DNA of 64,000 nt from Macrostomum hystrix. Taxonomy: Eukaryota; Animalia; Platyhelminthes. Below, piece after piece: positions 8,982 to 59,798 of the stretch (position 1 is its first letter; every line of letters starts with the position of its first letter). Under the pieces are notes generated by a model. It did no database searches and had not been told where the DNA came from. It was given only the letters and a program-made list of their open reading frames with translations. Location of the stretch: contig CATNEN010000001.1 in NCBI GenBank assembly GCA_950097015.1, forward strand, positions 11,346,001 through 11,410,000, written 5' to 3'. A program made the position numbers and the translations under genes.

Positions 8982-11900
8982 ATGGACGAATGCCAAGGTC
9001 GCACAGCCAGCCTGGAACAACTGCATCACGAAGTTGAGAGTCTGTTCCTGCGCGAATTCGGCTGTAAACCGGATCATGTGGTGTACGCGCCCGGCCGGGT
9101 TAACATCATCGGGGAGCACACCGATTACAATGACGGCTTGGTGCTGCCCATGGCTCTGCCGCTAGTCACTATGATGGCTGGAAAACGGACCGACGCTAAC
9201 ACGGTTGGTTGTGACGACCCAATTAAATGAGTCCTATAGAAATAGATAAATGTCAGCCACAGCCATTAGCCGGGATGGAAATTGTTTGAGGTTGCGCGCA
9301 GCCTATTGACCGAACGCAGCCTTTAACAGTACTTCACTTAACAGTACAGCCAACTACTTCACTTCATGATAGCTCCAAAACAGAATGATAGATTTTCGTG
9401 AAAGTCCACCAAAATTTTCCGCTCTTTACTATGAACTAATCATTGAGAATTTAGCGATTCTCGTCGAAGACCCTGTTGACAAGGACAACTAAAATTGCTA
9501 CAGCAGCTAATTTATGGTTTCTTGTCACTGCTAAATGCAAGCTTTTGCCTATCGCATACCTCTGCGGCATTTCCTAGCACTTATCTTACCTCTTACGATG
9601 GTCAAACAGCGCGAAGTCGTTGTTGACTGCTTCAAGGCCGGGAGATCGGCCAAGGAGTGCATACAGCACCTGCAGGCCATCTACGGCAGCGAAGCCTTGT
9701 CGCGGAGGCAAGTATATCACATATTTGAACAGCTTCGTGAAGGTCACGATGGCTCACGAGGTCACCATCGTGATCCAACTGTTAGGACGCCAGCGAATGT
9801 GGCGATGGTTGAGGAGATGATCAGCGACGACAGGCGCCTCACTGTTAGGGAACTGGCCGACTTGACTGGCATCTCGAAGACAACTGTTGACGAGATTCTG
9901 ACCAAGGATCTGCAGCTGAAGCATGTGTCAGCAAGATGGGTGCCGCACCTTCTGACTGAGGAGAACCGAGCTGAGCGAGTTCGCTGCGCCAAGAACTTCT
10001 ATCGCCTGAAGTGCCTGAAGCGCAGCAATCCCGGCTTCCTTGATAGAGTCACTGCTGATGAGACATGGCTGCACTATGTGACGCCAGGGACCAAGGTTCA
10101 GTCGAAGCAGTGGGTTCCGCGTGCAGCTGCGGCCCCAACGAAAGCGCGGGTGTCGCGCAGTGCCAAGAAGACCATGGCCATTGTGTTCTTCGACTCGAGC
10201 GGGCTGGTGTACACGAATTATGTGCCAAATGGGCTGACGGTCAACAGCCAGTACTACTGCGAGATCCTGGACACTCTTCAAGAGCAAATCAGCCGCAAGA
10301 GGCCGCAGCTGACGCGAAGAGGCTGGTTCCTCCATCATGACAATGCCCGCCCCCATGTGTCAGCGTTGACCCAGTAGTTCCTCGAGAGGCGAGGCATTCA
10401 GACTGTGCCACATCCGCCGTACTCCCCGGACTTGGCCCCATGCGGACTTTCGGCTATTTCCCAAAGTCAAAGCCGCGATCGCTGGCACCCGTTTTGACTC
10501 CAGGCTGCAGGAGGTCAAGAATGCTTCGGAGGGGTCACGACCCCTATGCCTGCGTCTAGCTTCGCAGAGGCCTTCGACAAGTGGCTGGTGAGGTGGGAGC
10601 GGTGTCTGGAGAAAGGTGGCAACTTTGTTGAGAAGTGACTCAAGTTTCGTTTTGTTTGCATGCATTGTTGCTGGGTTATTAAAGCAGTCCTATTTTTGGC
10701 CTACCCTCGTATAAGCCTCTATGGTTAATCTATATTAGCAATACAATTTATAATACAACAATTATAGCCGACAGCTGTTGGTAACTAACATGATTTTGTG
10801 AGCAGAGAAAGTATGCCTATATTGATGGTTTTCGACCATCCATTATCCAGGTAAACGTTGTCACAGGCGGCAAAGATGTCACTGTAAAACTGTTACCAAG
10901 CTCGGCTAAGGACATCTGTGCCAGCTTCTCCGTGCCAGATCCCAAACGAGAGCGTCGCGACGGTGCCGAACGCATCCCGGATGCCGATTGGCCCAACTAT
11001 GTCAAAGGTGTCATCGTTAATTATAAGCGACTTTGCGGCGGATTCAATGCGGCCATTGTCACCACTGTACCGTTGGGTGGCGGTTTGTCTTCGTCTGCCG
11101 CGTTGGAGGTGGCCACCTACACCTTGCTGGAGCAGCTATTCCCAATGGACAGTCCGGCGACGCCGGTGAGTGAGTGTGAGGGAGTGTGAGGAGGGTAGCA
11201 TGGAGTGAGGTGGGTGGCATGGAGTGAGTTGGGTGGCATGGAGTGAGGTGGGTGGCATGGAGTGAGGTGGGTGGCATGGAGTGAGGTGGGTGGCATGGAG
11301 TGAGGTGGGTGGCATGGAGTGAGGTGGGTGGCATGGAGTGAGGTGGGTGGCATGGAGTGAGGTGGGTGGCATGGAATGAGGTAGGTGGCATGGAGTGAGG
11401 CGGGCGGCATGAGCGGGTGTGTTGGAGTAGCGCGGGTGTCTCAGAGTGAGCCAGGTGTATCAGAGTGGGGCGGGTGTCTCAGACTGATTTGACATTGCAG
11501 CAATAACATAGTCTAATAAATTCGCAACCAACCAGGTTGAGAAGGCCCTAGCCTGTCAGGAGGCGGAGCATGTCTACGCAGGTGTGCCCTGCGGCATCAT
11601 GGACCAGTTTGTCAGCGTGATGGCCACCGAGAACCACCTGCTGTGTATTGATTGCGAATCTATGCGCGTCACCCAGGTGCCGCTTCAAAATCCGCACGTT
11701 GTGGTGCTAATTACTAATTCCAATGTGCATCACAACCTGGGCAGCAGCGAGTATCCGGTTAGGCGGCTGCAGTGCGAAGCCGCCAGCAAAGCAATGGGCA
11801 AGCGATCGCTGCGGCTCTGCACAATGGCCGATCTAGATGCTGCGGCCAATATTGATGAGGTGTCGGCTGTCTCTTCAACTTCGGCTGTGTGCTAACTAGC

Positions 11901-12572
11901 AAAAGTTTCCTTGAGATTAGTCTAGTCTGTTCAGTGCGTTTGTTAACACCCTCCAGAATACCAACCTGACTCCAGGACACCCACCTGACTCCAGGACGCC
12001 CACCTCACTCCAGGACGCCCACCTCACTCCAGGACGCCCACCTCACTCCAGGACGCCCACCTCACTCCAGGACGCCCACCAAATTCCAGAACACCCGCTT
12101 CAATACAGAACACCCACCTCAGTTCAGAACACCCATCGTCAGGCTTTATCATTTATATCGTTAAGCCCCAATAATCCCGATCCAACTACCCCAGACAACC
12201 AGACGCCGCGCGCGTCACGTGATCAGCGAAAACGCTCGTGTTCTGCAGGCGATCGAAAGTCTGAAGACCACCGACTTTTGCCGCCTCGGCGCCCTCATGA
12301 ACGAGTCGCACGCCAGTCTACGCGACGATTTCGCCGTCTCCTGTCCGGAGATCGACCAGCTGGTGGACATCGCCCAGAAGCAGCCGGGTGTCTACGGCAG
12401 TCGCATCACAGGGGGCGGCTTCGGTGGCTGCACTGTCACCCTTGTCAAACGGAGCCACGTTGACGAGCTGATGAAAGCAATCTATGAGGGCTACGCTACC
12501 GCTGATAGGAGACCCACTTTCTACGTTTGCAACGCTTCTGGCGGTGCAGGTCTCTATGCCATTGACAAATGA
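8982..12572 (+). CDS. GALK1: Galactokinase; exons 8982..9203, 10851..11165, 11536..11859, 12195..12572
   Basis: [85 protein letters not shown]. All four exons join in phase 0 at GT-AG sites. Confidence 0.95.
9598..10711 (+). mobile_element. Mariner (DD34D) transposon, inactivated, in GALK1 intron 1
   Basis: [21 protein letters not shown] and [13 protein letters not shown] motifs with 34-residue D-D spacing. In-frame TAG at 10375 and a +1 frameshift near 10444. The right end ...ggcctaccctcgTA (10711) looks like a mariner TIR; no left TIR was found. Confidence 0.9.
11198..11410. repeat. 19-bp minisatellite (gcatggagtgaggtgggtg) in GALK1 intron 2
   Basis: ~11 tandem copies. Confidence 0.95.
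11963..12080. repeat. 19-bp minisatellite (cgcccacctcactccagga) in GALK1 intron 3
   Basis: ~6 tandem copies, related to the reverse complement of the intron 2 unit. Confidence 0.9.
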
Positions 12573-13162
12573 TTAACGGATACTTTTTTAGCGAGCGTTG
12601 GACTTCTAAATAGATTACCTAACTTACATCTAGGATGCTATTTCCAGAGTACCTTTTGGGTTGAATATCAAAATGCTTTGATTTTTTAGCTTTAGCACTT
12701 TAAAAAATATTATTTCTGATTACTCAGACTGTCACCTGTACGACACACTGTCACCTGTTAGTAGGTAGGATGCTGGCTCCTTTAATATTGTGCGTTAAAA
12801 TTGTGTTAATAACTTTCATAAGACATTTTCACAAGAAAAATTCTAATTTTTACAACACTGCAACATACAAAAATATTTTACAACACTTATATTGCTACTG
12901 TACGAATGTTTCTCTTAGTATTTTACATTTGCTAATTTAAGCAGATAATTTATTTAAATTTTTTATCTACGATTTTTTTAATTTAAAACAAATCTACAAC
13001 ATTCTTCATTGCTTCATTTCCCACACTGAAAAAAATGTATACGCTTTATGTGGAGCTTGCAAAAGCATGGAAATGTTTATGACCTTTTCAATTAGTTTTT
13101 TATCAAACTTTCAGAGATCAAGAAAGTCAAGAAGGTTTCTAAAAACTCCAAGCAACATACAA

Positions 13163-16100
13163 ATGGGACAGAAAATCAGCTTTGAGCGAGCTGTAGCAGA
13201 GGGGCTGGAAACCGAAGTTCGAAATCACTTAAAATCAATCAAAAGCAGCTCAAGAAGAGATGGACTGTGTGAAGTGCATTGGCGTCTTGCTGCGAATCAC
13301 CGTCACTGGGAAATTGTGAAACTTCTGGTGCAGACAGTTGCGGACCAAACACTGAGAGATCAGTGCTGCAAGGAGGCTGTGGAATCCGCTGCAAGATTAG
13401 GTCAGTTGGAAGTGGTCAAATTTTTGGTGCCGACAATTGCTGACCAACCACTGAGAGATCAGTGCTGCAAGGAGGCTGCAGAGTTTGCTGCAAACAATGG
13501 TCAGTTGGAAGTGGTCAAATTTTTGGTGCCGACAATTGCCGACCAACCACTGAGAGATCAGTTCTGCAAGGAGGCTGCAGTAATGGGTCAGTTGGAAGTG
13601 GTCAAATTTTTGGTGCGGACAATTGCTGACCAAACACTGAGAGATCAGTGCTGCAAAGAGGCTGCGGAATCTGCTGCAAGATATGGTCAGTGGGAAGTGG
13701 TCAAGTTTTTGGTGCCGACAATCGCTGACCAACCACTGAGAGATCAGTGCTGCAAGGCGGCTGCGGAATCTGCTGCAAGAACGGGTCAGTGGGAAATGGT
13801 CAAATTTTTCTTGGGGACAGATGCCGACCAAGACTTTCGTTATGTCTGTGCAGTCGCGGCTTGCACTCATCTCCGTGAAAATGTCGTAAAGGAACTTGGA
13901 CTTCAGCCCGAGTGGCTCTTCGAGTCCAGCAAAGTCCTCAGCTTCACCGCCTCGATGGCCATTGAGGGCAGGAACGATGTTCTCAGCCAGACTCTGTCTC
14001 GAATGCAGCCAGCTCAGATCACACAGCTGCTCTGTGTCTCCATCTCCCATGGCCATGTCGCACTGGCTCTCACACTCCTCCATGACCAGCGATTCAGCAA
14101 AAAACATGTCGATGTGCCCGACAGCACAGGAGCCACTGCTCTCATGCTGGCAGCTGATGCAGGTCATCACGAGCTCATCGAGAGGCTGGTGGATCTCGGT
14201 GCGTCAGTGCGAGCTGAAGACAGTCAGGGTCGGACAGCTCTGTCGCGAGCTTGTGAGGCGGGTCACGTGCGAGCAGCCAAGACGCTGATGGACAGAGGAG
14301 CGGATGCGAGTCATCGGGACAGTCGGGGCCAGACGTGCGCGCAGGTGGCGGAGCAGCTGGGACATCAGCAGGTGCTGCGGCTGCTGGAGAACAGAACTTC
14401 GAAGTGAGTCCGTTCTCATTTGCAGTGCTGTAAAAGCCTTATTCCTTGCCCAATCTGAACACTAAGACAACTAAAACAACCAAAACCTATATCTTACCCA
14501 ACACATTAGTCTCTTTTCCATTACAAGCACTCTGCCGATCTAGTCATTGCAACTGTGACACTTCATTCTGATCGAGGATTTGATTTCAGTTTTTCTTCTG
14601 AACTTTCAGTGACTTGAGTGCTGAGGAGGTAGCCGGACTCTGCACCGACTCGGGTCTCGTTGAGTGAGTTGCTGATTCTGATTGAGAATTCCCCTCTGCT
14701 GATGAGCTTGAGATGCCAGTCTGAATGCAGCAGCAGCTGGACTCTCAGCTGATCAGCTTGAGATGCCAGTCTGAATGCAGCAGCAGCTGGACTCTCAGCT
14801 GATCAGCTTGAGATGCCAGTCTGTGCAGGTGTACAACCCATCAGCTGACTGAATTCCCCATCATTCCAGGCTCAGAGACGACTCACAGCGGGACAGGCAG
14901 CTCAGTGAGGAACTGCACCGACTGCTCAGCGAGGCGGGATTCACTCAGAAGAGAGCGGAGTGTCAGCAGAGAATGGCTGACTGGCTGCAACTAGTCGCTC
15001 GAGTCCTCACTCAGAACTGGGAGATGCAGATGACAGGCAGCTACGCAGAGGGCTGGGCCAACAGTCTGGTGCAAGTGAACGGCAGGACAGCGGCTGACTC
15101 AGACATTGACTGGACTGTGCTGGTTCAAGGGCAACTGCTGCATCTGGAGGGCACCTGCGACGGAAAAAAGGATGCTTGGAAAGACTGTGAAGCTGCCACG
15201 AAGCTGCGGGTCATGGAGGGTCACGCTCAGGTGGCAGTGGGGTCGGGTGAGTCACACCGGATATTCTTTTTTTTATTATTTTTTTTATCTTTTTACTAGC
15301 GTGCATTAGTATTTCACTGTTAAATTTATCATTTTTATAATTATTTCCCTGTGGTTCACATTTAAGTGCAAGTTGTTTTCCACTACCCTATGATGTACAG
15401 TTTGAACGATGGTTTTGAGCTATTTTGAGCTAGTTTGAACTAAATAATAGTTTTGAGCTATAATATATCATGAGCGAAATAATTATAATTTCTTGATTTC
15501 AAACATAACTACCAATTTCTTATCGATAAATTTTCGCAAAAGTCTGCTCTACTGGTCACCACTCACTGCAGGCAGCCAACCTGCCGTCTCAGCCAAGGCA
15601 TGCGGTGTGCGGCCTGCTCAGGACACGTGCCATGCGATCCAGTGCTGCAGTGGCTTCTGTGAGGACAGAGTCGAGAAGCTGATTGGACACAGCTACACTT
15701 CTGTTCACCTCGTGAGGGCGACCAAACCGAATGAGACCAATGAGCTCAGAGTGAGCTTCAGCTTCCAAGAGAAAGAGGCCATGAGACGGCTGAGCACAGT
15801 CCTGGGACAGCTGTTCTCAATCATCAAGTTCATCTTTAAGCGACATTTGCCACTCACTCTGGACACTCCTGGACTCAAGACCTACCATGCAAAGACTCTG
15901 CTCTTCTTCATGCTGGAGAAGCATGGCACAGACCCGAATGCTGAAGCTTGGCAGTCTCAGAATCTGATCTCACTGCTGAAGGAGTCTCTCGACATGATGC
16001 TGAGCTTCATCGACTCAAGCAGCTCACCCGATGAGTGCATGCCGCACTTCTTCATGCCCGACGCTCCGCTCTACTTCAAGAACGCTGGAATCGGCGGCGA

Positions 16101-16692
16101 CTTCGACAACACAAAGACGAGGGTTCGAGACCGACTGAGAGAGCTGAGAAGCGACATCGGCGGAGTGGTTGAGCAGATGAGGAGACTCGTGAGACCTCTG
16201 CAGTCAGAGAATTTCTACTTTCACCTGTTCACTCTGCTGCCACTGACAGCGCCGCCTGCTGTCACTCAGATTAGGCAAGAATCTGATTATAGTAGTCTTG
16301 AGAAGTCAGCAGACGTGTACAGTGTGGTGCACCATTGTGTTCGCGAGCTGCAGTCAGAGTCTGCAGACAGAGACACCCTGATGAGGCAGCTCAGTCTCCT
16401 GCTTCAGCTGCGGTGGTGCAAGTGCGCCGCCCTGTGCATGACCGCCATGGCGCATCAAATGGATCCTGAAACGGATCTAGAGCGACTCCTTAGAGATAAG
16501 CCTTCGGCAAATCGAAGAAATAGAAAAATTCTTGCCTTGTTATTGTGGCAGTGTGTTTTAGAAAAGGTTTTCATTTTTGTATATACGTTTATGCTTTGTC
16601 ATTTCTTTCTTACATTATGTAAAAAAATAAGTAAAATTATTAAAATCAAAAACGCGCCAAAAATAAATATTTTGTTTTACTTTTTCCCGTAA
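13163..16692 (+). CDS. Ankyrin-repeat + Mab21/cGAS-like receptor (cGLR) nucleotidyltransferase, copy A (5 variable repeats, 3'-truncated, possibly a pseudogene); exons 13163..14403, 14870..15246, 15572..16692
   Basis: 33-aa ankyrin-like array plus canonical ANKs (GATALMLAADAGH, GRTALSRACEAGH). NTase motif TGSYAEG...DSDID, candidate third Asp QDTCHAI, and Mab21 motifs LRVSFSFQEK, LKTYHAKTLLF, MPHFFMP. Exons join in frame (2739 nt). Homology to copy B stops after MAH at ~16455. Confidence 0.85.
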
Positions 16693-33403: not shown

Positions 33404-34180
33404 TCTTAGATTCTAGATTCCCTGCTGCTATCCATGATATCTAGCGCTATATTCTTTAGTTTTATGTTCTCATTCGAATTATTATACTTTCAAAATACAG
33501 AAAAACAATGATTGCTTTCCTGCAAGAAAAAAACGCTAAGTTTGTTAAGAGTAATCCTATTAGCTAGTATACAAATATTATCTCCTAGTTTTGAATCTAA
33601 TAACGATTACAGCAATGCTCGGAACACATTTCTTTAGTTTAGAATATAAAATAACGTATAACATAACAGCTACGTATGCTCTGAAAACAGCTTCGTCATT
33701 TATTTTATAATCCTATTGAATATTGCTTGCAAGAATGCTTGAAAAACGTTAAAATTAAAAATGAACCGAGCTTTGCTCAAAGTATTTTTGAATCTAAAAA
33801 ACGCTGGCAGAAATGCTCGAGAATTATTTTCTCAGTTTTGTATCGAATAAAAGTTGCTGCTGCACTCAAAAAAATATTTTTTCTTTTCTCAGAGCGAGAA
33901 ACTTAATTATTTGCTTTGACAGTAGCTCATTATATCACCAGTTCGTTGTACAATAAAAACCTAAAAGAGAATAATGAAAAACTTATACGAACCGTACTGA
34001 CATTTTTAACTGTTGAGGATAGACTATTACTCAATATATCATGCTACCCCTCGATAATTTATGCAAGCCAGTTAATAAATATCATTCTACCCCCTTGATA
34101 AATTATGCTTCCACCTAGATAATTCATGCTTTTTCATTTATAATTCATCTTTCCCCTAAAAAATGCATGACTCCACCTAG

Positions 34181-37083
34181 ATAATTAATGCTTTCCATCG
34201 ATAATTCATGCTTTCCATCGATAATTCATGCTTTCCATCGATAATTCATGCTTTCCATCGATAATTCATGCTTTCCATCGATAATTAATGCTTTCCATCG
34301 ATAATTAATGCTTTCCATCGATAATTAATGCTTTCCATCGATAATTAATGCTTTCCATCGATAATTCATGCTTTCCATCGATAATTAATGCTTTCCATCG
34401 ATAATTCATGCTTTCCATCGATAATTAATGCTTTCCATCGATAATTCATGCTTTCCATCGATAATTCATGCTTTCCATCGATAATTCATGCTTTCCATCG
34501 ATAATTAATGCTTTCCATCGATAATTCATGCTTTCCATCGATAATTCATGCTTTCCATCGATAATTCATGCTTTCCAACGATAATTCATGCTTTCCATCG
34601 ATAATTCATGCTTTCCAACGATAATTCATGCTTTCCATCGATAATTCATGTTTTCTATCGATAATTCATGCTTTCCATCGATAATTCATGCTTTCCATCG
34701 ATAATTCATGCTTTCCATCGATAATTCATGCTTTCCATCGATAATTCATGCTTTCCATCGATAATTAATGCTTTCCATCGATAATTCATGCTTTCCATCG
34801 ATAATTAATGCTTTCCATCGATAATTAATGCTTTCCATCGATAATTCATGCTTTCCATCGATAATTCATGCTTTCCATCGATAATTCATGCTTTCCATCG
34901 ATAATTCATGCTTTCCATCGATAATTCATGCTTTCCATCGATAATTCATGCTTTCCATCGATAATTCATGCTTTCCATCGATACTTCATGCTTTCCATCG
35001 ATAATTCATGCTTTCCATCGATAATTCATGCTTCCTATCGATAATTCATGCTTTCCATCGATAATTCATGCTTTCCATCGATAATTAATGCTTTCCATCG
35101 ATAATTCATGCTTTCCATCGATAATTCATGCTTTCCATCGATACTTCATGCTTTCCATCGATAATTCATGCTTTCCATCGATAATTCATGCTTCCTATCG
35201 ATAATTCATGCTTTCCATCGATAATTAATGCTTTCCATCGATAATTCATGTTTTCCATCGATAATTCATGCTTTCCATCGATAATTCATGCTTTCCATCG
35301 ATAATTCATGCTTTCCATCGATAATTCATGCTTTCCATCGATAATTCATGTTTTCCATCGATAATTCATGCTTTCCATCGATAATTCATGCTTTCCATCG
35401 ATAATTCATGCTTTCCATCGATAATTCATGCTTTCCATCGATAATTCATGCTTTCCATCGATAATTCATGCTTTCCATCGATAATTCATGCTTTCCATCG
35501 ATAATTCATGCTTTCCATCGATAATTCATGCTTTCCATCGATAATTCATGTTTTCCATCGATAATTCATGCTTCCCATCGATAATTCATGTTTTCCATCG
35601 ATAATTCATGCTTCCCATCGATAATTCATGTTTTCCATCGATAATTCATGTTTTCCATCGATAATTCATGCTTTCCATCGATAATTCATGCTTTCCATCG
35701 ATAATTCATGCTTTCCATCGATAATTCATGTTTTCCATCGATAATTCATGCTTTCCATCGATAATTCATGCTTTCCATCGATACTTCATGCTTTCCATCG
35801 ATAATTCATGCTTTCCATCGATAATTCATGTTTTCCATCGATAATTCATGCTTTCCATCGATAATTCATGCTTTCCATCGATAATTCATGCTTTCCATCG
35901 ATAATTCATGCTTTCCATCGATAATTCATGTTTTCCATCGATAATTCATGCTTTCCATCGATAATTCATGTTTTCCATCGATAATTCATGCTTTCCATCG
36001 ATAATTCATGTTTTCCATCGATAATTCATGCTTTCCATCGATAATTCATGCTTTCCATCGATAATTCATGCTTTCCATCGATAATTCATGCTTTCCATCG
36101 ATAATTCATGCTTTCCATCGATAATTCATGCTTCCCATCGATAATTCATGCTTTCCATCGATAATTCATGCTTTCCATCGATAATTCATGCTTTCCATCG
36201 ATAATTCATGCTTTCCATCGATAATTCATGCTTTCCATCGATAATTCATGTTTTCCATCGATAATTCATGCTTTCCATCGATAATTCATGCTTTCCATCG
36301 ATAATTCATGCTTTCCATCGATAATTCATGCTTTCCATCGATAATTCATGTTTTCTATCGATAATTCATGTTTTCCATCGATAATTCATGCTTTCCATCG
36401 ATAATTCATGCTTTCCATCGATAATTCATGCTTTCCATCGATAATTCATGCTTTCCATCGATAATTCATGCTTTCCATCGATAATTCATGCTTTCCATCG
36501 ATAATTCATGTTTTCTATCGATAATTCATGTTTTCCATCGATAATTCATGTTTTCCATCGATAATTCATGTTTTCCATCGATAATTCATGCTTTCCATCG
36601 ATAATTCATGCTTTCCATCGATAATTCATGCTTTCCATCGATAATTCATGCTTTCCATCGATAATTCATGCTTTCCATCGATAATTCATGCTTTCCATCG
36701 ATAATTAATGCTTTCCATCGATAATTCATGCTTTCCATCGATAATTCATGCTTTCCATCGATAATTCATGCTTTCCATCGATAATTCATGCTTTCCATCG
36801 ATACTTCATGCTTTCCATCGATAATTCATGCTTCCTATCGATAATTCATGCTTTCCATCGATAATTCATGCTTTCCATCGATAATTCATGCTTTCCATCG
36901 ATAATTCATGCTTTCCATCGATAATTCATGCTTTCCATCGATAATTCATGCTTTCCATCGATAATTCATGTTTTCCATCGATAATTCATGCTTCCCATCG
37001 ATAATTCATGTTTTCCATCGATAATTCATGCTTTCCATCGATAATTCATGCTTTCCATCGATAATTCATGCTTTCCATCGATA
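34181..37083. repeat. 20-bp satellite (ataattcatgctttccatcg), ~145 copies
   Basis: Long homogeneous array with degenerate flanking units. Confidence 0.98.
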
Positions 37084-37274
37084 ACTTATTCTTCGCCTGG
37101 ATATTTCACTCTTTCCCTTTCGATAATTACTACTTACCCCTCGATGCGAGCTTTATTTCACCGATAATTCATGCTACCAAATCGATAATTTCTGTTCTTC
37201 TTTAATAATTCATGCTACCCCTTGGTAATTTATGCTTTTCCCACGTTAATTCATGCTTCCCCTCGTTAATACTA

Positions 37275-54681: not shown

Positions 54682-57600
54682 TCAAGGCTCCGGCAGCGAC
54701 TTCGCAAACCGCTGCAGCTTTGATTGGACCCAGCCGTCTCTCTGCAGCGCTACCGTTTCCATGGCAACAAGTCGACCGAAGTCAGCTCTGACTGGATGCA
54801 GCCGCGCTCTCACCCACAGCCTCTGCTCCTCATCCTCCGAGCTCGAGTGACCGACGCTGCAGCTGCGAGTGGAAATTCGCCACCGCTTCTCCCTGACCCA
54901 GCGGATCTTCTCCTCATCCTGCGTCTCCATGGCGACGCGTCTCTCGTCCCTGACGGTCTCCATCTGTTGCAGGCTGAACTCCACGTGCTCAGCTTGGTCG
55001 CTGTAGTGAGCCAGAGTGAGCAGCTCCTCCAAGTCCGGGTCCTCTTGCAGCTCTAAGAGCCACGCATCGAAGTCGATTGCTGTGCGATTGCGGAGCAGCT
55101 CAGCTTGGAGACTCCAGCTCAGGCAGCGGAAGTTCACGTACAGGTGCTCAGAGCGAGGCTGTGACAGTCTGGCTGTGAGCAGAGTCTGCGTGAACTCGGG
55201 AAGGAATGGGAATCGAGGCGGAGTGTCTGCTGGGAGGCAGAACTTCCACGCCCAGTCCGAGCCTGATGGCAGCTTTGCTCCGATATCAACAGGCCTCATT
55301 CCACTCTGAACTCTGTGACTCTGGAGCTCCATCGCGAGTCTCTCAGCCTCCTCGGAGTCTCCGAACTTCAAATGCGCCATGGCGGTCATGCACAGGGCGG
55401 CGCACTTGCACCACCGCAGCTGATGCAGGAGACTGAGCTGCCTCATCAGGGTGTCTCTGTCTGCAGACTCTGACTGCAGCTCGCGAACACAATGGTGCAC
55501 CACACTGTACACGTCTGCTGACATCTTATAACTAGCACCTTCCCTTATCTGAGTGACAGCAGGCGGCGCTGTCAGTGGCAGCAGAGTGAACGGGTGAAAG
55601 TAGAAGTTCTCTGACTGCAGACGTCTCACGAGTCTCCTCATCTGCTCAACCACTCCGCCGATGTCGCTTTTCAGCTCTCTCAGTCGGTCTCGTACCCTCG
55701 TCTTCGTGTTGTCGAAGTCGCCGCCGATTCCAGCGTTCTTGAAGTAGAGCGGAGCGCCGGGCATGAAGAAGTGCGGCATGCACTCATCGGGTGAGCTGCT
55801 TAAGTCGATGAAGCTCAGCATCATGTCGAGAGACTCCTTCAGCCGTGAGATCAGATTCTGAGGCTGCCAAGCTTGCCAAGGATTCGGGTCTGTGCCATGC
55901 TTCTCCAGCATGAAGAAGAGCAGAGTCTTTGCATGGTAGGTCTTGAGTCCAGGAGTGTCCAGAGTGAGTGGCAAGTGTCTCTTGAAAATGAACTTGATGA
56001 CTGAGAACAGCTGTCCCTGGACTGTGCTCAGCCGTCTCATGGCGTGTTTCTCTTGGAAGCTGAAGCTCACTCTGAGCTCATTGGTCTCATTCGGTCTGGT
56101 CGCCCTCACGAGGTGAACAGTTAGGACATTTTCCACCCCGTAGCTGTATCGAATCAGCTTTCTGATTCTGTCCTCACAGAAGCCACTGCAGCACTGGATC
56201 GCATGGCACGTGTCCTGAGCAGGCCGCACACCGCATGCCTTGGCTGAGACGGCAGGTTGGCTGCCTGCAGTGAGTGGTGACCAGTGGAGCAGATTTTTGC
56301 GAAAATTTATCGATAAGAAATTGGCAGTTATGTTTAATATCAAGAAATTATAATTATTTCGCTCATCATAGCTCAAAACTATAATTTAGCTGACTTTGAA
56401 ATTCTCAACTTTGAAATCGACAGCGACATACGAAAAGTCAAAATGAAATCCTAAATACTAAAGTATTTATTACTTAACGAAGCAGCATGTTCTGGATGTG
56501 ATCATTCGATTCCCAAGTTAAGGCATCCCATCACTCAAACTGTACGTCACAAGGTAGTAGAAAAATGTGCACTGAAATGTGAACCAGCGGGAAATAATTA
56601 TAAAAAGGATAAATTTAACAGTGAAATACTAACACACGCTCGTAAAAAGATAAAAAAAAATAATTAAAAAAAAGAATATCCGGTGTGACTCACCCGACCC
56701 CACTGCCACCTGAGCGTGACCCTCCATGACCCGCAGCTTCGTGGCAGCTTCACAGTCTTTCCAAAGCTCATTCGTTCCATCGCAACCGCCCTCCAGATGC
56801 AGCAGTTGCCCTTGAACCGGCACAGTCCAGTCAATGTCTGAGTCAGCCGCTGTCCTGCCGTTCACTTGCACCAGACTGTTGGCCCAGCCCTCTGCGTAGC
56901 TGCCTGTCATCTGCATCTGCGAGTTCTGAGTGAGGACTCGAGCGACTCCTTCCAGCAAGTCAGCCATTCTCTGCTGACACATTGCTCTCTCCCGAGTGAA
57001 TCCCGCCTCGCTGAGCAGTCGGTGCAGTTCCTCACTGAGCTGCCAGTCCCGCTGTGAGTCGTCGCTGAGCCTGGAATGATGGGGAATTCAGTCAGCTGAT
57101 GGGTTGTACACCTGCACAGACTGGCATCTCAAGCTGATCAGCTGAGGCGAATTTCCAATCAGAATCAGAAACTCACTCAGCGAGAGCCGAGTCGGTGCGG
57201 AGTCCAGCTGCCTTTTTCTTTTTTCTGCTGCTGGAAAAGGGCGCAGGTTTAGATTAGTTTTACCCGAAACGGTCTGCACGAGTACACCAAGGGCAAAAAG
57301 CGGGTTAAAATTTAGAATATAAAAACGGACTTACTTCGAAGTTCTGTTCTCCAGCAGCCGCAGCACCTGCTGATGTCCCAGCTGCTCCGCTACCTGCGCG
57401 CACTTCTGGCCCCGACTGTCCCGATGACTCGCATCCGCTCCTCTGTCCATCAGCGTCTTGGCTGCTCGCACGTGACCCGCCTCACAAGCTCGCGACAGAG
57501 CTGTCCGACCCTGACTGTCTTCAGCTCGCACTGACGCACCGAGATCCACCAGCCTCTCAATGAGCTCGTGATGACCTGCATCAGCTGCCAGCATGAGAGC

Positions 57601-59484
57601 AGTGGCTCCTGTGCTGTCGTCTGGCAGATCGACATGTTCTCTGCTGAATCGCTTGTCATGGAGGAGTGTGAGAGCCAGTGCGACATGGCCATGGGAGATG
57701 GAGACACAGAGCAGCTGTGTGATCTGAGCTGGCTGCATTCGAGACAGAGTCTGGCTGAGAACATCGTTCCTGCCCTCAATGGCCATCGAGGCGGTGAAGT
57801 TGAGGACTTGGATGGACTGGAAGAGCCACTCGGGCTGAATTCCAAGTTCCTTGACGACATTTTCACGGAGATGAGAGCAAGCCGCGACTGCACAGACATA
57901 GCGAAAATCTTGGTCAGCATCTGTCCCCAACAAAAATTTGACCAGCACTTCCAACTGATCATTGTTTGCAGCAGATTTCGCAGCCTCCTTGCAGCACTGA
58001 TCTCTCAGTGGTTGGTCAGCAATTGTCGGCACCAAAAATTTGACCACTTCCCACTGACCCTCACTTGCAGCAGATTCCGCAGCCTCCTTGCAGCACTGAT
58101 CTCTCAGTGTTTGATCAGCAATTGTCGGCACCAAAAATTTAACAACTTCCAACTGACCATTGATTGCAGCCAATTTCGCAGAGTCCTTGCAGCACTGATC
58201 TTTCAGTTTTTGGTCAGCAATTGTCGGCAACAAATATTTGACCACTTCCCACTGACCATCGATTGCAGCCAATTTCGCAGTCTCCTTGCAGCACTGATCT
58301 TTCAGTTTTTGGTCAGCAATTGTCGGCACCAAAAATTTGACCACTTCCCACTGACCCCTGATTGCTGCAGATTCCGCAGCCTCCTTGCAGCACTGATCTC
58401 TCAGAGTTTGGTCAGCAATTGTCGGCACCAAAAATTTGACCACTTCCCACTGACCATCGATTGCAGCCAATTTCGCAGTCTCCTTGCAGCACTGATCTTT
58501 CAGTTTTTGGTCAGCAATTGTCGGCACCAAAAATTTGACCACTTCCCACTGACCCCTGATTGCTGCAGATTCCGCAGCCTCCTTGCAGCACTGATCTCTC
58601 AGAGTTTGGTCAGCAATTGTCGGCACCAAAAATTTGACCACTTCTAACTGACCCTTCCATGCTGCAGATTCCGCAGCCTCCTTGCAGCACTGATCTCTCA
58701 GTGTTTGGTCAGCAATTGTCGGCACCAAAAATTTGACCACTTCCAACCGACCATTTCTTGCAGCAGATTCCGCAGCCTCCTTGCAGCACTGATCTCTCAG
58801 TGTTTGGTCAGCAATTGTCGGCACCAAAAATTTGACCACTTCCCACTGACCATTGATTGCAACAGATTTCGCAGCCTCCTTGCAGCACTGATCTCTCATT
58901 TTTTCGTCAGCGATTGTCGGCACCAAAAATTTGACCACTTCCAACCGACCATTTCTTGCAGCAGATTCCGCAGCCTCCTTGCAGCACTGATCTCTCAGTG
59001 TTTGGTCAGCAATTGTCGGCACCAAAAATTTGACCACTTCCCACTGACCATTGATTGCAACAGATTTCGCAGCCTCCTTGCAGCACTGATCTCTCATTTT
59101 TTCGTCAGCGATTGTCGGCACCAAAAATTTGACCACTTCCAACCGACCATTTCTTGCAGCAGATTTCGCAGCCTCCTTGCAGCACTGATCTCTCAGTTTT
59201 TCATCAGCAATTGTCGGCACCAAAAATTTGACCACTTCTAACTGACCCTTCCATGCAGCAGATTCCGCAGCCTCCTTGCAGCACTGATCTCTCAGTGATT
59301 GGTCCGCAACTGTCTGCACCAGAAGTTTCACAATTTCCCACTGACTGTGATTCGCAGCAAGACGCCAACGCTTTACACACAGTCGATTCCTTCTGGAGCT
59401 GCTTTTGATTGATCTTAAGTGATTTCGAACTTCGGTTTCCAGCCCCTCTGCTACAGCTCGCTCAAAGCTAATTTTCTGACCCAT
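54682..59484 (-). CDS. Ankyrin-repeat + Mab21/cGAS-like receptor (cGLR) nucleotidyltransferase, copy B (intact, 14 variable repeats, ~1369 aa); exons 59484..57335, 57070..56694, 56264..54682
   Basis: Same introns as copy A (phase 2, phase 1), 4110 nt in frame. N-cap + 14 x 33-aa repeats + canonical ANKs + NTase (GSYAEG...DSDID; QDTCHAI) + Mab21 C-lobe (LKTYHAKT, MPHFFMP) + helical/TPR-like tail (AHLKFGDSEEAERL). Confidence 0.9.
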
Positions 59485-59798
59485 TTGTATGTTGCTTGGA
59501 GTTTTTGGAAACCTTCTTGACTTTCTTGATCTCTGAAAGTTTGATAAAAAAAACTAATTAAAAAGGTCATAAAAATTATCATGTCTTCGCATGCCCTAAA
59601 GCGCATAAATTTTGTCTTTCTAAGAGTTTCAATTGGTTGGGGCTGGGAATTACATAACAAATTTTTTCTTTACCTCGAGAAAAACTAAACACAACCATTA
59701 AGTTCTTTTGTGGCGCACTTTCCCGCCGTGAATATATGGCAAATGAGAAGTGCAGTACGAATATTCTGCCCACATGTACTTAAATTCTGGGAATTTCT

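What the first reader, a model, noticed from the sequence alone, without database searches (positions are those of the whole stretch)
57901..59289. Repeat-variable di-residue at DARPin randomised positions
Seen: consensus DQCCKEAA[EK][SL]AA-xx-GQ[LW]EVVKFLVPTIADQTLR. In copy B xx = WK,RN,IN,RN,IN,RN,WK,IR,ID,IR,ID,IN,SE,NN; in copy A xx = RL,NN,VM,RY,RT. That is 11 different dipeptides in 19 repeats on an almost fixed scaffold, with lesser variation at [EK][SLF] one helical turn earlier and at DQT/DEK/DQP/DQK. Known: the two residues between LAA and G of helix 1 are among those randomised in designed ankyrin proteins (DARPins) because they face the ligand; TALE repeats use a similar variable-diresidue logic. 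Inference: diversifying selection on a binding surface, possibly a modular one-repeat-per-unit recognition code for a protein or nucleic-acid ligand.
Basis: partly seen in the sequence, partly recalled or inferred. Interest (0 to 1): 0.88.

Follow-up and report, generated by a model that had tools for sequence, protein, structure and literature searches.

The report
Hypervariable patch in flatworm ankyrin-cGLR array
A flatworm gene joins 14 near-identical ankyrin-type repeats to a cGAS-like enzyme, and the repeats differ mainly at a few residues that in known ankyrins face the ligand and that change faster than silent sites, as in fungal immune receptors; a TALE-like code is not supported.

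Summary
Copy B (57904-59289, minus strand) has 14 units of 33 aa and copy A has 5. The dipeptide lists and the count of 11 are exact.

A gapless alignment to designed ankyrins puts xx at DARPin positions 13-14.

I extracted 226 such units from 24 arrays of this 220-Mb Macrostomum-type genome. Positions 13 and 14 have the highest entropy, 2.3-2.4 bits.

In 12 independent arrays, replacement divergence at codons 13, 14, 9, 31, 10 and 17 is 2-5 times the array's silent divergence. Most other codons are well below it. Independent unit pairs give about 2-fold (p=6e-4).

RNA contigs show the array exon spliced in frame to Mab-21 (cGAS-like) exons.

Best reading (0.55): a diversifying ligand-binding patch on a concertedly evolving, non-canonical ankyrin solenoid that acts as the sensor arm of a cGAS-like receptor family. 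The closest analogue is the fungal NLR ankyrin repeats (PMC4986451).

- The variable element is a linked cassette, positions 13-17 plus 9/10 and 31.
- Scaffolds differ between arrays.
- The array is acidic. Nothing supports a one-repeat-one-unit or nucleic-acid code.

Surface exposure was inferred by homology, not measured. The scan had already flagged this family, and similar arrays on TRP channels, elsewhere in this genome.

The parts
57904..59289 (-). Array of 14 x 99-nt (33-aa) degenerate ankyrin units of copy B. Hot codons within each unit are 13, 14 (xx), 9, 10, 17 and 31. The xx codons of unit u lie at 59253-99(u-1)..59248-99(u-1).
59290..59484 (-). N-terminal cap of the array exon (residues 1-65, starting MGQKISF), including one degenerate unit. 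An upstream splice acceptor lies at 59532, so the true N-terminus is not settled.
57335..57903 (-). C-terminal part of the array exon: helical cap plus canonical ankyrin repeats (best Pfam Ank stretch is residues 595-689). It ends at the donor GAA|GTAAGT, which overlaps the apparent stop codon.
57177..57230 (-). 54-nt in-frame cassette exon (Lys-rich linker). It is present in some RNA contigs and skipped in one run.
56693..57070 (-). Exon with the nucleotidyltransferase-type motifs GSYAEGW and SDIDW. It has no significant Pfam or PDB sequence match on its own.
54682..56263 (-). Mab-21 C-terminal lobe and family-specific tail, up to the stop codon.
13358..13840 (+). Array of copy A (5 units, one with a 12-nt deletion), inside the ORF 13067..14407. 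It is followed by paralogous Mab-21 ORFs at 14973..15299 and 15493..16692, in inverted orientation to copy B.

Best explanation
The units form a non-canonical ankyrin solenoid. Each 33-aa unit is a 17-residue inner helix (positions 30-33 plus 1-13), a 3-residue turn (14-16), a 10-residue outer helix (17-26) and a short loop. The solenoid is the N-terminal arm of an ankyrin-cGAS-like (Mab-21) protein. It belongs to a lineage-specific Macrostomum family with dozens of loci and arrays of 4 to 41 units. Tandem duplication, unequal crossing-over and gene conversion keep the scaffold of each array homogeneous. A small patch stays diverse because amino-acid changes there are favoured. That patch is the end of the inner helix and the turn (13-17), one turn earlier (9/10), and position 31. 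By homology with ankyrins and DARPins, this patch lies on the inner-helix side that binds ligands. The arrays are therefore most likely a germline repertoire of different binding surfaces for proteins or peptides. Shown: the repeat anatomy, the hot positions, the excess of replacement over silent change, the concerted evolution and the splicing to the Mab-21 exons. Inferred: that the patch is a ligand-binding surface, that binding controls the enzyme, and that the role is immune.
For: Entropy peaks at positions 13 and 14 (2.33 and 2.41 bits), then 31, 9 and 10, in 185 unique units. Tree-based counts give a replacement rate over the global silent rate of 1.96, 2.34 and 2.54 at codons 13, 14 and 31 (Poisson p 1e-4 to 2e-7). 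In 84 disjoint nearest-neighbour unit pairs, codons 13+14 run at 2.1 times the silent rate (conditional binomial p 5.8e-4). Within arrays, the median pN/pS is 4.9 at codon 13, 3.9 at 14, 3.5 at 31, 3.4 at 9, 2.8 at 10 and 2.2 at 17, above 1 in 10-12 of 12 arrays. All other codons have a median of 1.4 or less. In copy B the 24 codons outside the hot set have pN 0.033 against pS 0.115. Twelve unit pairs are identical outside codons 13-14 but carry different dipeptides. Concerted evolution: 9.4 nt differences within arrays against 15.4 between arrays, and identical 99-mers shared between arrays. M. lignano homologues have the same hot positions. The units align without gaps to designed ankyrins. 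The AF2 model has pLDDT 91.8 and Foldseek's best match is the AnkB 24-repeat solenoid. GT..AG joints in contigs of four runs from two studies link the array exon to the Mab-21 exons. Exon 3 matches Mab-21_C at 29.4 bits against a cut-off of 24.1. The literature places the ligand groove on the inner helices and finger loops (PMC4358367). It also describes the same regime in fungal NLR ankyrin repeats (PMC4986451).
Against: Background constraint in the family is weak. Global omega over all units is 0.82-0.98, and pN/pS is about 0.99 in the non-repeat C-terminal domain of close paralogues. With each codon's own silent counts, only codon 14 is nominally significant (p 0.018). Single-codon p values in the independent-pair test do not survive correction for 33 codons. 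Fourfold-site diversity is raised next to the patch: 0.15-0.21 at codons 8, 11 and 15 against a mean of 0.077. A local mutation or conversion effect is therefore not excluded, although replacement-site diversity is still about twice that. Trees of 99-nt recombining units are unreliable, and arrays share ancestry, so the sign tests are approximate. Surface exposure was not computed. No ligand, enzyme activity or immune phenotype is known. The array is probably cytoplasmic. This genome also carries homogenised ankyrin arrays on TRP channels, so tandem homogenisation here is not specific to immune-type genes.
Confidence: 0.55

Rival explanations
1. There is no ligand-driven selection. The hot positions are simply the least constrained exposed residues of a fast-turning tandem array in a minisatellite-rich genome. 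The apparent excess over silent change comes from gene conversion that erases silent differences unevenly, from a local mutation hot spot, and from method bias.
For: Family-wide omega is near 1. Fourfold-site diversity is raised at codons 8, 11 and 15 beside the patch. Tests using each site's own silent counts are weak for codons 13 and 31. Positions 10 and 13 are among the most variable in natural ankyrins generally (PMC4308713). The window has 50 TRF rows, and the genome has other homogenised ankyrin arrays.
Against: Relaxed constraint gives omega up to 1, not 2-5. The excess recurs in 10-12 of 12 arrays at the same six codons and in independent close pairs. It remains about 2-fold against the locally raised fourfold diversity. 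Other codons in the same units are constrained (pN/pS 0.24-0.3 in copy B and in the array at C1:12820900). Of the 110 family matches, 108 have no internal stop and two carry one TAG. The same positions are hot in M. lignano.
Confidence: 0.25
2. The patch does not meet a foreign ligand. It mediates self-contacts instead, either autoinhibitory docking on the protein's own Mab-21 domain or tail, or homo-oligomerisation. It diverges between paralogues to keep them insulated from each other.
For: Ankyrin-B/G grooves bind their own disordered tail segments (PMC4358367). The protein has a long family-specific C-terminal tail. Many paralogues coexist in one genome.
Against: The diversity lies mainly between units inside one array rather than between paralogues. 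Array length ranges from 4 to 41 units, which is hard to reconcile with docking onto one fixed partner domain. No co-variation with the tail was examined.
Confidence: 0.12
3. This is a TALE-, PUF- or PPR-like modular code. Each unit type, defined by its 13-17 cassette, reads one element of a linear polymer (nucleic acid or peptide), so the order of units spells a target.
For: Long arrays use a small alphabet of unit types in aperiodic order. Examples are IK/IN/IR/RE in the 41-unit array and IE/TK/SE in the 21-unit array. The variable residues sit at the end of helix A and in the inter-helix turn, as TALE RVDs sit in an inter-helix loop (the TALE geometry is from my own knowledge).
Against: Units differ at several linked sites and scaffolds vary. 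The array is acidic (pI 5.2). The fold and superhelix match ankyrins with about 24 repeats per turn, not DNA-matched solenoids (PMC4358367). Variant-repeat interspersion arises from unequal crossing-over alone. Thirty-nine different dipeptides occur, which is not a compact code.
Confidence: 0.05

Closest known systems
[quoted passage not shown] 2014, PMC4986451)
   Same: Tandem, near-identical 33-aa ankyrin units with differing repeat numbers and concerted evolution within and between paralogues. A handful of codons are under positive diversifying selection on the inner helix or loop side. The array is attached to an innate-immunity-type signalling domain. Fungal NACHT-ANK proteins are the next-best sequence matches after Macrostomum.
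   Different: Here the host is an animal. The signalling domain is a Mab-21/cGAS-like nucleotidyltransferase, not a NOD, and it lies C-terminal to the array. The finger hairpin is replaced by a helix with a conserved Cys-Cys pair. Repeat-number variation between individuals has not been tested here, only differences between paralogues.
Ankyrin-repeat fusions among animal cGAS-like receptors (Li et al. 2023, 10.1101/2023.02.22.529553)
   Same: The ANK plus cGLR domain architecture. Macrostomum lignano cGLRs are in that paper's supplementary file 3, among the enzymes expressed for its screen.
   Different: The paper's main text mentions ankyrin only as a domain label. It does not describe repeat homogeneity, hypervariable positions or selection. 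No ligand or product is reported there for ANK-cGLRs.
Designed ankyrin repeat proteins (DARPins, ANK-N5C libraries; PMC3602593, PMC4308713)
   Same: 33-aa units on a constant framework, with diversity at positions 13/14 (DARPin) or 10/13 (ANK-N5C). The alignment is gapless at E 1e-23.
   Different: Natural, not designed. Hairpin positions 2, 3, 5 and 33 are not the variable ones. Framework G15, H16 and L17 do vary here. The TPLH motif is absent and the hairpin is predicted helical.
TALE repeat-variable diresidues
   Same: 33-34-aa two-helix units that are nearly identical, with two adjacent hypervariable residues at or near the inter-helix turn (the TALE geometry is from my own knowledge).
   Different: A different fold family. 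Variation is not confined to the diresidue. The array is acidic. There is no evidence of DNA binding or of a one-to-one code.
Ankyrin-B/G/R membrane-binding domain (4RLV; PMC4358367)
   Same: The best structural match (TM 0.57/0.51). A long solenoid whose inner groove binds extended peptides through several quasi-independent sites.
   Different: In ankyrins the groove is extremely conserved. Here the corresponding positions are the most variable.

Membership tests
Ankyrin repeat (Pfam clan Ank) | 33-residue tandem period with a significant match to ankyrin profiles or sequences | tested here: met
   Period of 99 nt. Pfam Ank_2 at E 2.6e-71 with 9 stretches. Five array units alone match designed ankyrins at E 1e-23 without gaps.
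Ankyrin repeat (Pfam clan Ank) | Helix-turn-helix units stacked into a curved solenoid | tested here: met
   AF2 model with pLDDT 91.8 and two helices per unit. Foldseek's best hits are AnkB, ankyrin-1 and DARPins. The same helix pattern appears in a second model of M. lignano P0014.
Ankyrin repeat (Pfam clan Ank) | TPLH motif and a beta-hairpin or finger loop (GxTPLH) between repeats | tested here: not met
   The units read DQCCKEAA in place of DxxGxTPLH. DSSP on both models shows a continuous 17-residue helix across positions 30-13 and no strands. This makes it a divergent, non-canonical ankyrin.
DARPin-like variable positions | xx corresponds to positions 13-14, at the end of helix 1 before G15 | tested here: met
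   Gapless alignment of AARNGRLEVVKFL to AARAGHLEIVEVL in 6mol, 4o60 and 4qfv. In the model, position 13 is the last helix-A residue and 14 the first turn residue.
DARPin-like variable positions | The variable residues line the concave, ligand-facing surface | not testable with these tools
   Model coordinates are not exported, so no solvent-exposure or concavity calculation was possible. The inference rests on homology (PMC4358367, PMC3602593). A weak helical periodicity of entropy on helix A (best angle 95 degrees, permutation p 0.07) points the same way.
Hypervariable, internally conserved repeats of immune-type receptors (fungal NLR type) | High internal conservation of the repeats | tested here: met
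   89% matches over 14.5 copies. Within arrays the units differ by 9.4 of 99 nt on average.
Hypervariable, internally conserved repeats of immune-type receptors (fungal NLR type) | Positive diversifying selection at a few codons | tested here: met
   all by counting methods. Formal recombination-aware codon models were not available.
Hypervariable, internally conserved repeats of immune-type receptors (fungal NLR type) | Concerted evolution and exchange of units within and between paralogues | tested here: met
   For 150 of 220 units the nearest unit lies in the same array. Eleven identical 99-mers are shared between arrays, four of them outside the duplicated gene pair.
Hypervariable, internally conserved repeats of immune-type receptors (fungal NLR type) | Repeat-number polymorphism between individuals | not tested
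   Only paralogue differences were seen (4 to 41 units). The single read-laying run returned short contigs that cannot span arrays.
cGAS-like receptor (Mab-21 nucleotidyltransferase) | Mab-21 C-terminal lobe | tested here: met
   PF20266 at 29.4 bits against a cut-off of 24.1 in exon 3. Weak match to MAB21L1 (5eog), E 0.018.
cGAS-like receptor (Mab-21 nucleotidyltransferase) | Nucleotidyltransferase core with a G-S motif and three catalytic acidic residues | tested here: inconclusive
   GSYAEGW and SDIDW are visible in exon 2. That exon has no significant Pfam or PDB match. The third acidic residue could only be guessed from memory of the cGAS sequence. The cGLR part of the P0014 model has pLDDT below 50.
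cGAS-like receptor (Mab-21 nucleotidyltransferase) | One transcript joins the array and the enzyme | tested here: met
   GT..AG joints at 57335>57230, 57177>57070 and 56693>56263 occur in contigs of three or four runs from two studies, and all are in frame. The contigs may come from this gene or from a near-identical paralogue.
TALE-like modular code | Repeats identical except for the diresidue | tested here: not met
   161 distinct scaffolds remain after masking 13/14. The cassettes span 13-17 and are linked to 9 and 2.
TALE-like modular code | One-to-one correspondence between repeat type and ligand element | not testable with these tools
   No ligand is known.

The most novel reading that the evidence does not exclude
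The unit types, defined by their 13-17 cassettes, act as modules that each read one element of an extended ligand lying along the solenoid. The ligand could be a peptide, or less likely another polymer. The order of units would then specify the target of each cGAS-like receptor: a natural, programmable ankyrin code.
Probability: 0.05. Interest if true: 0.95.

Novelty: new variant of a known kind. Interest (0 to 1): 0.6.

Why it matters
cGAS-like receptors are known mostly as sensors of nucleic acids, and most have no known ligand. Here an animal family of them carries a sensor arm that evolves like the hypervariable repeat domains of fungal NLRs: homogenised units, a handful of fast-changing residues at ligand-facing positions, and array lengths from 4 to 41 units. 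If the reading is right, some animals diversify cGLRs through germline repeat shuffling so that they recognise many, probably protein, ligands. That would be a third route to variable innate receptors beside the LRR- and NLR-based ones. It would also provide a natural library on an ankyrin scaffold with a helical finger. Macrostomum lignano supports RNAi and transgenesis (my own knowledge), so the idea can be tested.

Tried and rejected
1. Strict HMM extraction of units from the M. lignano proteins gave only 9 units. I replaced it with anchor-based extraction, which gave 59.

2. The non-repeat C-terminal domain was meant as a purifying-selection baseline. It gave pN/pS of about 0.99 between close paralogues, so it is not a constrained baseline. 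It instead shows weak constraint across the family.

3. Exon 2 alone matched no Pfam family at E up to 1 and no PDB sequence at a meaningful E value.

4. I folded the full-length M. lignano homologue P0014 to test the cGLR fold. The ankyrin part was confident, but the enzyme part had pLDDT below 50 from an 8-row alignment. I ran no fold search on it.

6. Helical periodicity of entropy on helix A was only suggestive (p 0.07).

7. A search for STING in the genome found one sub-threshold match (25.6 bits against a cut-off of 27). This is not enough to claim a receptor.

8. Literature searches found no description of hypervariable ankyrin positions in cGLRs or in flatworms.

9. I rejected assembly artefact. 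All arrays keep the reading frame, the variation falls on the same codons in every array, and independent contigs reproduce pieces of the array with 0-2 mismatches.

10. I rejected the long ORFs on the opposite strand of the array (57568..58647 and 58705..59241). They are by-products of a stop-free repeat.

11. I did not build or search a joined (spliced) protein of this gene. The exons were searched separately by reference.
Full report
WHAT IS THERE

The window is G000:C1:11346001-11410000 of a 220-Mb eukaryotic assembly. The closest proteins in public databases are all from the flatworm Macrostomum lignano, at 64% identity or less, so this is another Macrostomum-type species.

The finding lies in a 717-aa ORF on the minus strand, 57331..59484. 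After a 65-residue N-terminal cap come 14 units of exactly 33 aa. They run from residue 66, which is nt 59289 down to 57904. TRF reports a period of 99 nt, 14.5 copies and 89% matches. A helical cap and canonical ankyrin repeats follow, and these carry the best Pfam Ank match at residues 595-689.

The paralogue at 13067..14407 (+) has five units, one shortened by 12 nt. That gives 11 different dipeptides in 19 units.

THE GENE

The apparent stop codon of the ORF overlaps a splice donor, GAA|GTAAGT. Contigs from public runs show three GT..AG joints (read on the minus strand) in three or four runs from two studies:
- 57335>57230
- 57177>57070, which defines a 54-nt in-frame cassette exon; one run skips it
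- 56693>56263

The array exon is therefore spliced in frame to two further exons. One carries GSYAEGW...SDIDW. The other matches Pfam Mab-21_C (29.4 bits against a cut-off of 24.1) and, weakly, MAB21L1.

The contigs are 95-100% identical to the window, so they may come from this gene or from a near-identical paralogue. An upstream acceptor at 59532 means the N-terminus is not settled.

I did not build or search a joined protein. The exons were searched separately by reference.

M. lignano homologues annotated as single proteins have the same architecture: array, canonical ANK, linker, Mab-21, tail. ANK-cGLR fusions are catalogued in Li et al. 2023, and M. lignano cGLRs are listed in its supplementary file 3 among the enzymes expressed for its screen. 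That paper's main text does not describe repeat homogeneity or hypervariable positions.

THE FAMILY

A six-frame search of the genome gave 110 matches. Of these, 108 have no internal stop and two carry one TAG. The open frames reach 1810 aa.

From 30 fetched loci I extracted 232 full-length, indel-free units in 24 arrays of 1 to 41 units. Of these, 226 passed a score filter, giving 185 unique DNA units and 176 unique protein units. They carry 39 different xx dipeptides. IN, RN, IK, IE, RK, RL and SE are the most common.

IS THE VARIATION CONCENTRATED, AND IS IT SELECTED?

Entropy. Positions 14 (2.41 bits) and 13 (2.33) are highest, followed by 31 (1.90), 9 (1.78) and 10 (1.36). D1, C4, A11, A12, V19, V20 and L23 are nearly invariant.

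I ran four counting tests.

(i) All pairs. pN at codons 13 and 14 is 2.5 and 2.4 times the global pS.

(ii) Parsimony counts on a FastTree tree. The replacement rate over the global silent rate is 1.96, 2.34 and 2.54 at codons 13, 14 and 31 (Poisson p 1e-4, 2e-7, 2e-7). With each codon's own silent counts, only codon 14 is nominally significant (p 0.018).

(iii) 84 disjoint nearest-neighbour pairs (mean 3.7 nt apart). This design is robust to tree error and recombination. The ratios are 2.1, 2.1 and 2.2 at codons 13, 14 and 31. For the pre-specified pair 13+14, the conditional binomial p is 5.8e-4. Single-codon p values (0.002-0.006) do not survive correction for 33 codons.

(iv) Within arrays, which removes between-array scaffold differences. 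In all 12 independent arrays of six or more units, pN at codons 13-14 (0.16-0.61) exceeds the array's pS (0.044-0.16). Median per-codon pN/pS, with the number of arrays above 1:
- codon 13: 4.9 (12 of 12 arrays)
- codon 14: 3.9 (11 of 12)
- codon 31: 3.5 (11 of 12)
- codon 9: 3.4 (12 of 12)
- codon 10: 2.8 (10 of 12)
- codon 17: 2.2 (11 of 12)
- every other codon: 1.4 or less, mostly near 0

In copy B itself, pS is 0.115 and pN(13-14) is 0.469. pN over the 24 codons outside 9, 10, 13-17, 30 and 31 is 0.033.

Twelve unit pairs are identical over the other 93 nt yet differ in the dipeptide.

M. lignano units, a second species, also have position 13 as the most variable and 14 as the third most variable.

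CAVEATS ON SELECTION

- The family background is weakly constrained. Global omega over units is 0.82-0.98. pN/pS is about 0.99 in the non-repeat C-terminal domain of close paralogues.
- Fourfold-degenerate sites next to the patch (codons 8, 11, 15) have raised diversity, 0.15-0.21 against a mean of 0.077. This is what linked neutral variation around long-lived selected variants would look like. It is also what a local mutation or conversion effect would give. Replacement-site diversity at 13, 14, 17 and 9 (0.31-0.47) is still about twice as high.
- Arrays share ancestry, so the sign tests are approximate.
- No recombination-aware codon model was available.

I rate diversifying selection on the patch as likely but not proven.

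CORRECTION TO 'DI-RESIDUE ON A FIXED SCAFFOLD'

Printing the long arrays shows that the variable element is a linked cassette over positions 13-17. Examples are INGQL, INGML, IKGHL, RERQW and RERSW. It is often coupled to E/K at 9 and Q/R at 2.

In M. lignano P0001 the cassette is ENGQ, ILRK, RYRQ, IFGP and so on. The framework residues G15, Q16 and L17 of the DARPin design therefore vary here.

Genome-wide, masking 13/14 leaves 161 distinct scaffolds among 226 units. Units of one array are more alike (9.4 nt differences) than units of different arrays (15.4). For 150 of 220 units the nearest unit lies in the same array, and some identical 99-mers are shared between arrays. This is concerted evolution with exchange.

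STRUCTURE

An AF2 model of the array exon (27-row alignment, mean pLDDT 91.8) gives each unit four elements:
- a 17-residue helix (positions 30-33 plus 1-13)
- a 3-residue turn (14-16)
- a 10-residue helix (17-26)
- a short loop (27-29)

There is no beta-hairpin. A second model, of M. lignano P0014, repeats this pattern.

Foldseek's best matches are the 24-repeat AnkB solenoid (E 2e-14, TM 0.57/0.51), ankyrin-1 and DARPins. Five array units align without gaps to designed ankyrins (4o60, 6mol, 4qfv; E 1e-23 to 1e-20), with xx opposite DARPin positions 13-14.

The TPLH motif and the finger hairpin are missing, however. Hairpin positions 2, 3 and 5, which DARPins randomise, are conserved here (Q, C, C, K).

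Position 13 is the last residue of the inner helix and 14 is the first of the turn. Positions 9 and 10 lie one turn earlier, 17 opens the outer helix, and 31 sits at the far (N-terminal) end of the inner helix.

In ankyrins, the inner helices and finger loops form the ligand groove and the outer helices form the convex back (PMC4358367). DARPin and ANK-N5C libraries randomise positions on that concave face (PMC3602593, PMC4308713). By homology the main patch is therefore on the ligand side.

I could not compute exposure or concavity, because coordinates are not exported.

MECHANISM

The best-supported reading (0.55): the array is the recognition arm of an ankyrin-cGAS-like receptor. Duplication, unequal crossing-over and conversion homogenise the scaffold and shuffle unit types. 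Amino-acid change in the 13-17, 9/10 and 31 patch is favoured. The paralogous arrays then form a germline repertoire of binding surfaces, most likely for proteins or peptides lying along the solenoid, as in ankyrin-B/G.

It is inferred, not shown, that binding controls the Mab-21 enzyme and that the role is immune. The catalytic competence of this copy is undecided: two acidic residues are visible in SDIDW, and the third could not be placed by any tool.

Rivals:
- Relaxed constraint plus repeat-turnover artefacts (0.25).
- Self-contacts or paralogue insulation (0.12).
- A TALE-like modular code (0.05).

Four points argue against the code:
- Units differ at several linked sites, and 39 different dipeptides occur.
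- The array is acidic (pI 5.2, net -8).
- The solenoid is of the ankyrin type.
- A few unit types in aperiodic order is what any variant-repeat array shows.

COMPARISON AND NOVELTY

[quoted passage not shown] These show repeat-number polymorphism, concerted evolution and positive selection at a few positions on the inner helices and hairpin region (PMC4986451). That paper also reports that such repeats are rare in metazoa (0.8%).

The present case differs in four ways. It is in an animal. It is on a cGAS-like enzyme instead of a NOD. It has a helical finger with a conserved Cys-Cys pair. Its hot patch is centred on the inner-helix end and turn. I classify it as a new variant of a known kind.

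Earlier notes of this scan had already flagged ANK-cGLR genes at other loci of this genome. Follow-ups there found them spliced, expressed and catalogued. The scan also flagged homogenised ankyrin arrays on TRP channels, where selection was not shown.

Noticed in passing
window 8982-12572 (+): Exons of a galactokinase gene (GalKase_gal_bdg at E 3e-22, GHMP_kinases_C at E 2e-15). A mariner-type transposase ORF (9535-10377; Transposase_1, HTH_48) and minisatellites sit in its introns.
   Followed up: partly
window, whole: Extreme minisatellite load. There are 50 TRF rows in 64 kb, for example a 20-nt unit repeated 145 times at 34180-37084. Several families recur in both orientations around the two ANK-cGLR paralogues, which face each other about 40 kb apart.
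   Followed up: no
window 57177-57230 (-): A 54-nt in-frame cassette exon that encodes a Lys-rich linker between the ankyrin and Mab-21 parts. It is included in contigs of four runs and skipped in one, so it is alternatively spliced.
   Followed up: partly
window 59485-59532 (-): A splice acceptor (tttcag|AG) 48 nt upstream of the MGQKISF start, in frame and without a stop. RNA contigs continue from it into an unseen upstream exon. The conserved MGxxxS start looks like an N-myristoylation motif (my own knowledge), but it may not be the true N-terminus.
   Followed up: partly
each unit, positions 3-4 (for example window 59283-59278 in unit 1): A Cys-Cys pair is among the most conserved features of the unit (C3 in 172 of 185 units, C4 in 181 of 185). 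It stands where canonical ankyrins have the hairpin xG. Copy B's array has 28 cysteines. It could serve packing, metal binding or redox sensing.
   Followed up: no
G000:C2:9104529-9104996 (-): The only STING ligand-binding-domain-like match in the genome. It scores 25.6 bits, just under the Pfam cut-off of 27, covers profile positions 3-145 and lies in a 337-aa open frame. It is a possible receptor for cGLR products.
   Followed up: no
G000:C1:12762205-12762897 and 12773555-12774247: Two 7-unit arrays with identical units, about 11 kb apart. This is a very recent tandem duplication of a whole gene.
   Followed up: no
G000:C1:13854935-13859587 (-): The largest array seen, in an open frame of 1810 aa. 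Forty-one indel-free units were extracted, with gaps that suggest about 48 in all. Its core uses essentially four cassettes (IN, IK, IR, RE types) in aperiodic order.
   Followed up: partly
M. lignano proteins P0015-P0017, P0019: Relatives of the ankyrin part are annotated together with protein-kinase domains instead of, or beside, Mab-21. The match is mainly to the canonical C-terminal ankyrin region. This may be domain shuffling or merged gene models.
   Followed up: no
window 57568-58647 and 58705-59241 (+): Long ORFs (359 and 178 aa) on the strand opposite the array. They are a by-product of a repeat that has no stop codons in that frame, not genes.
   Followed up: partly
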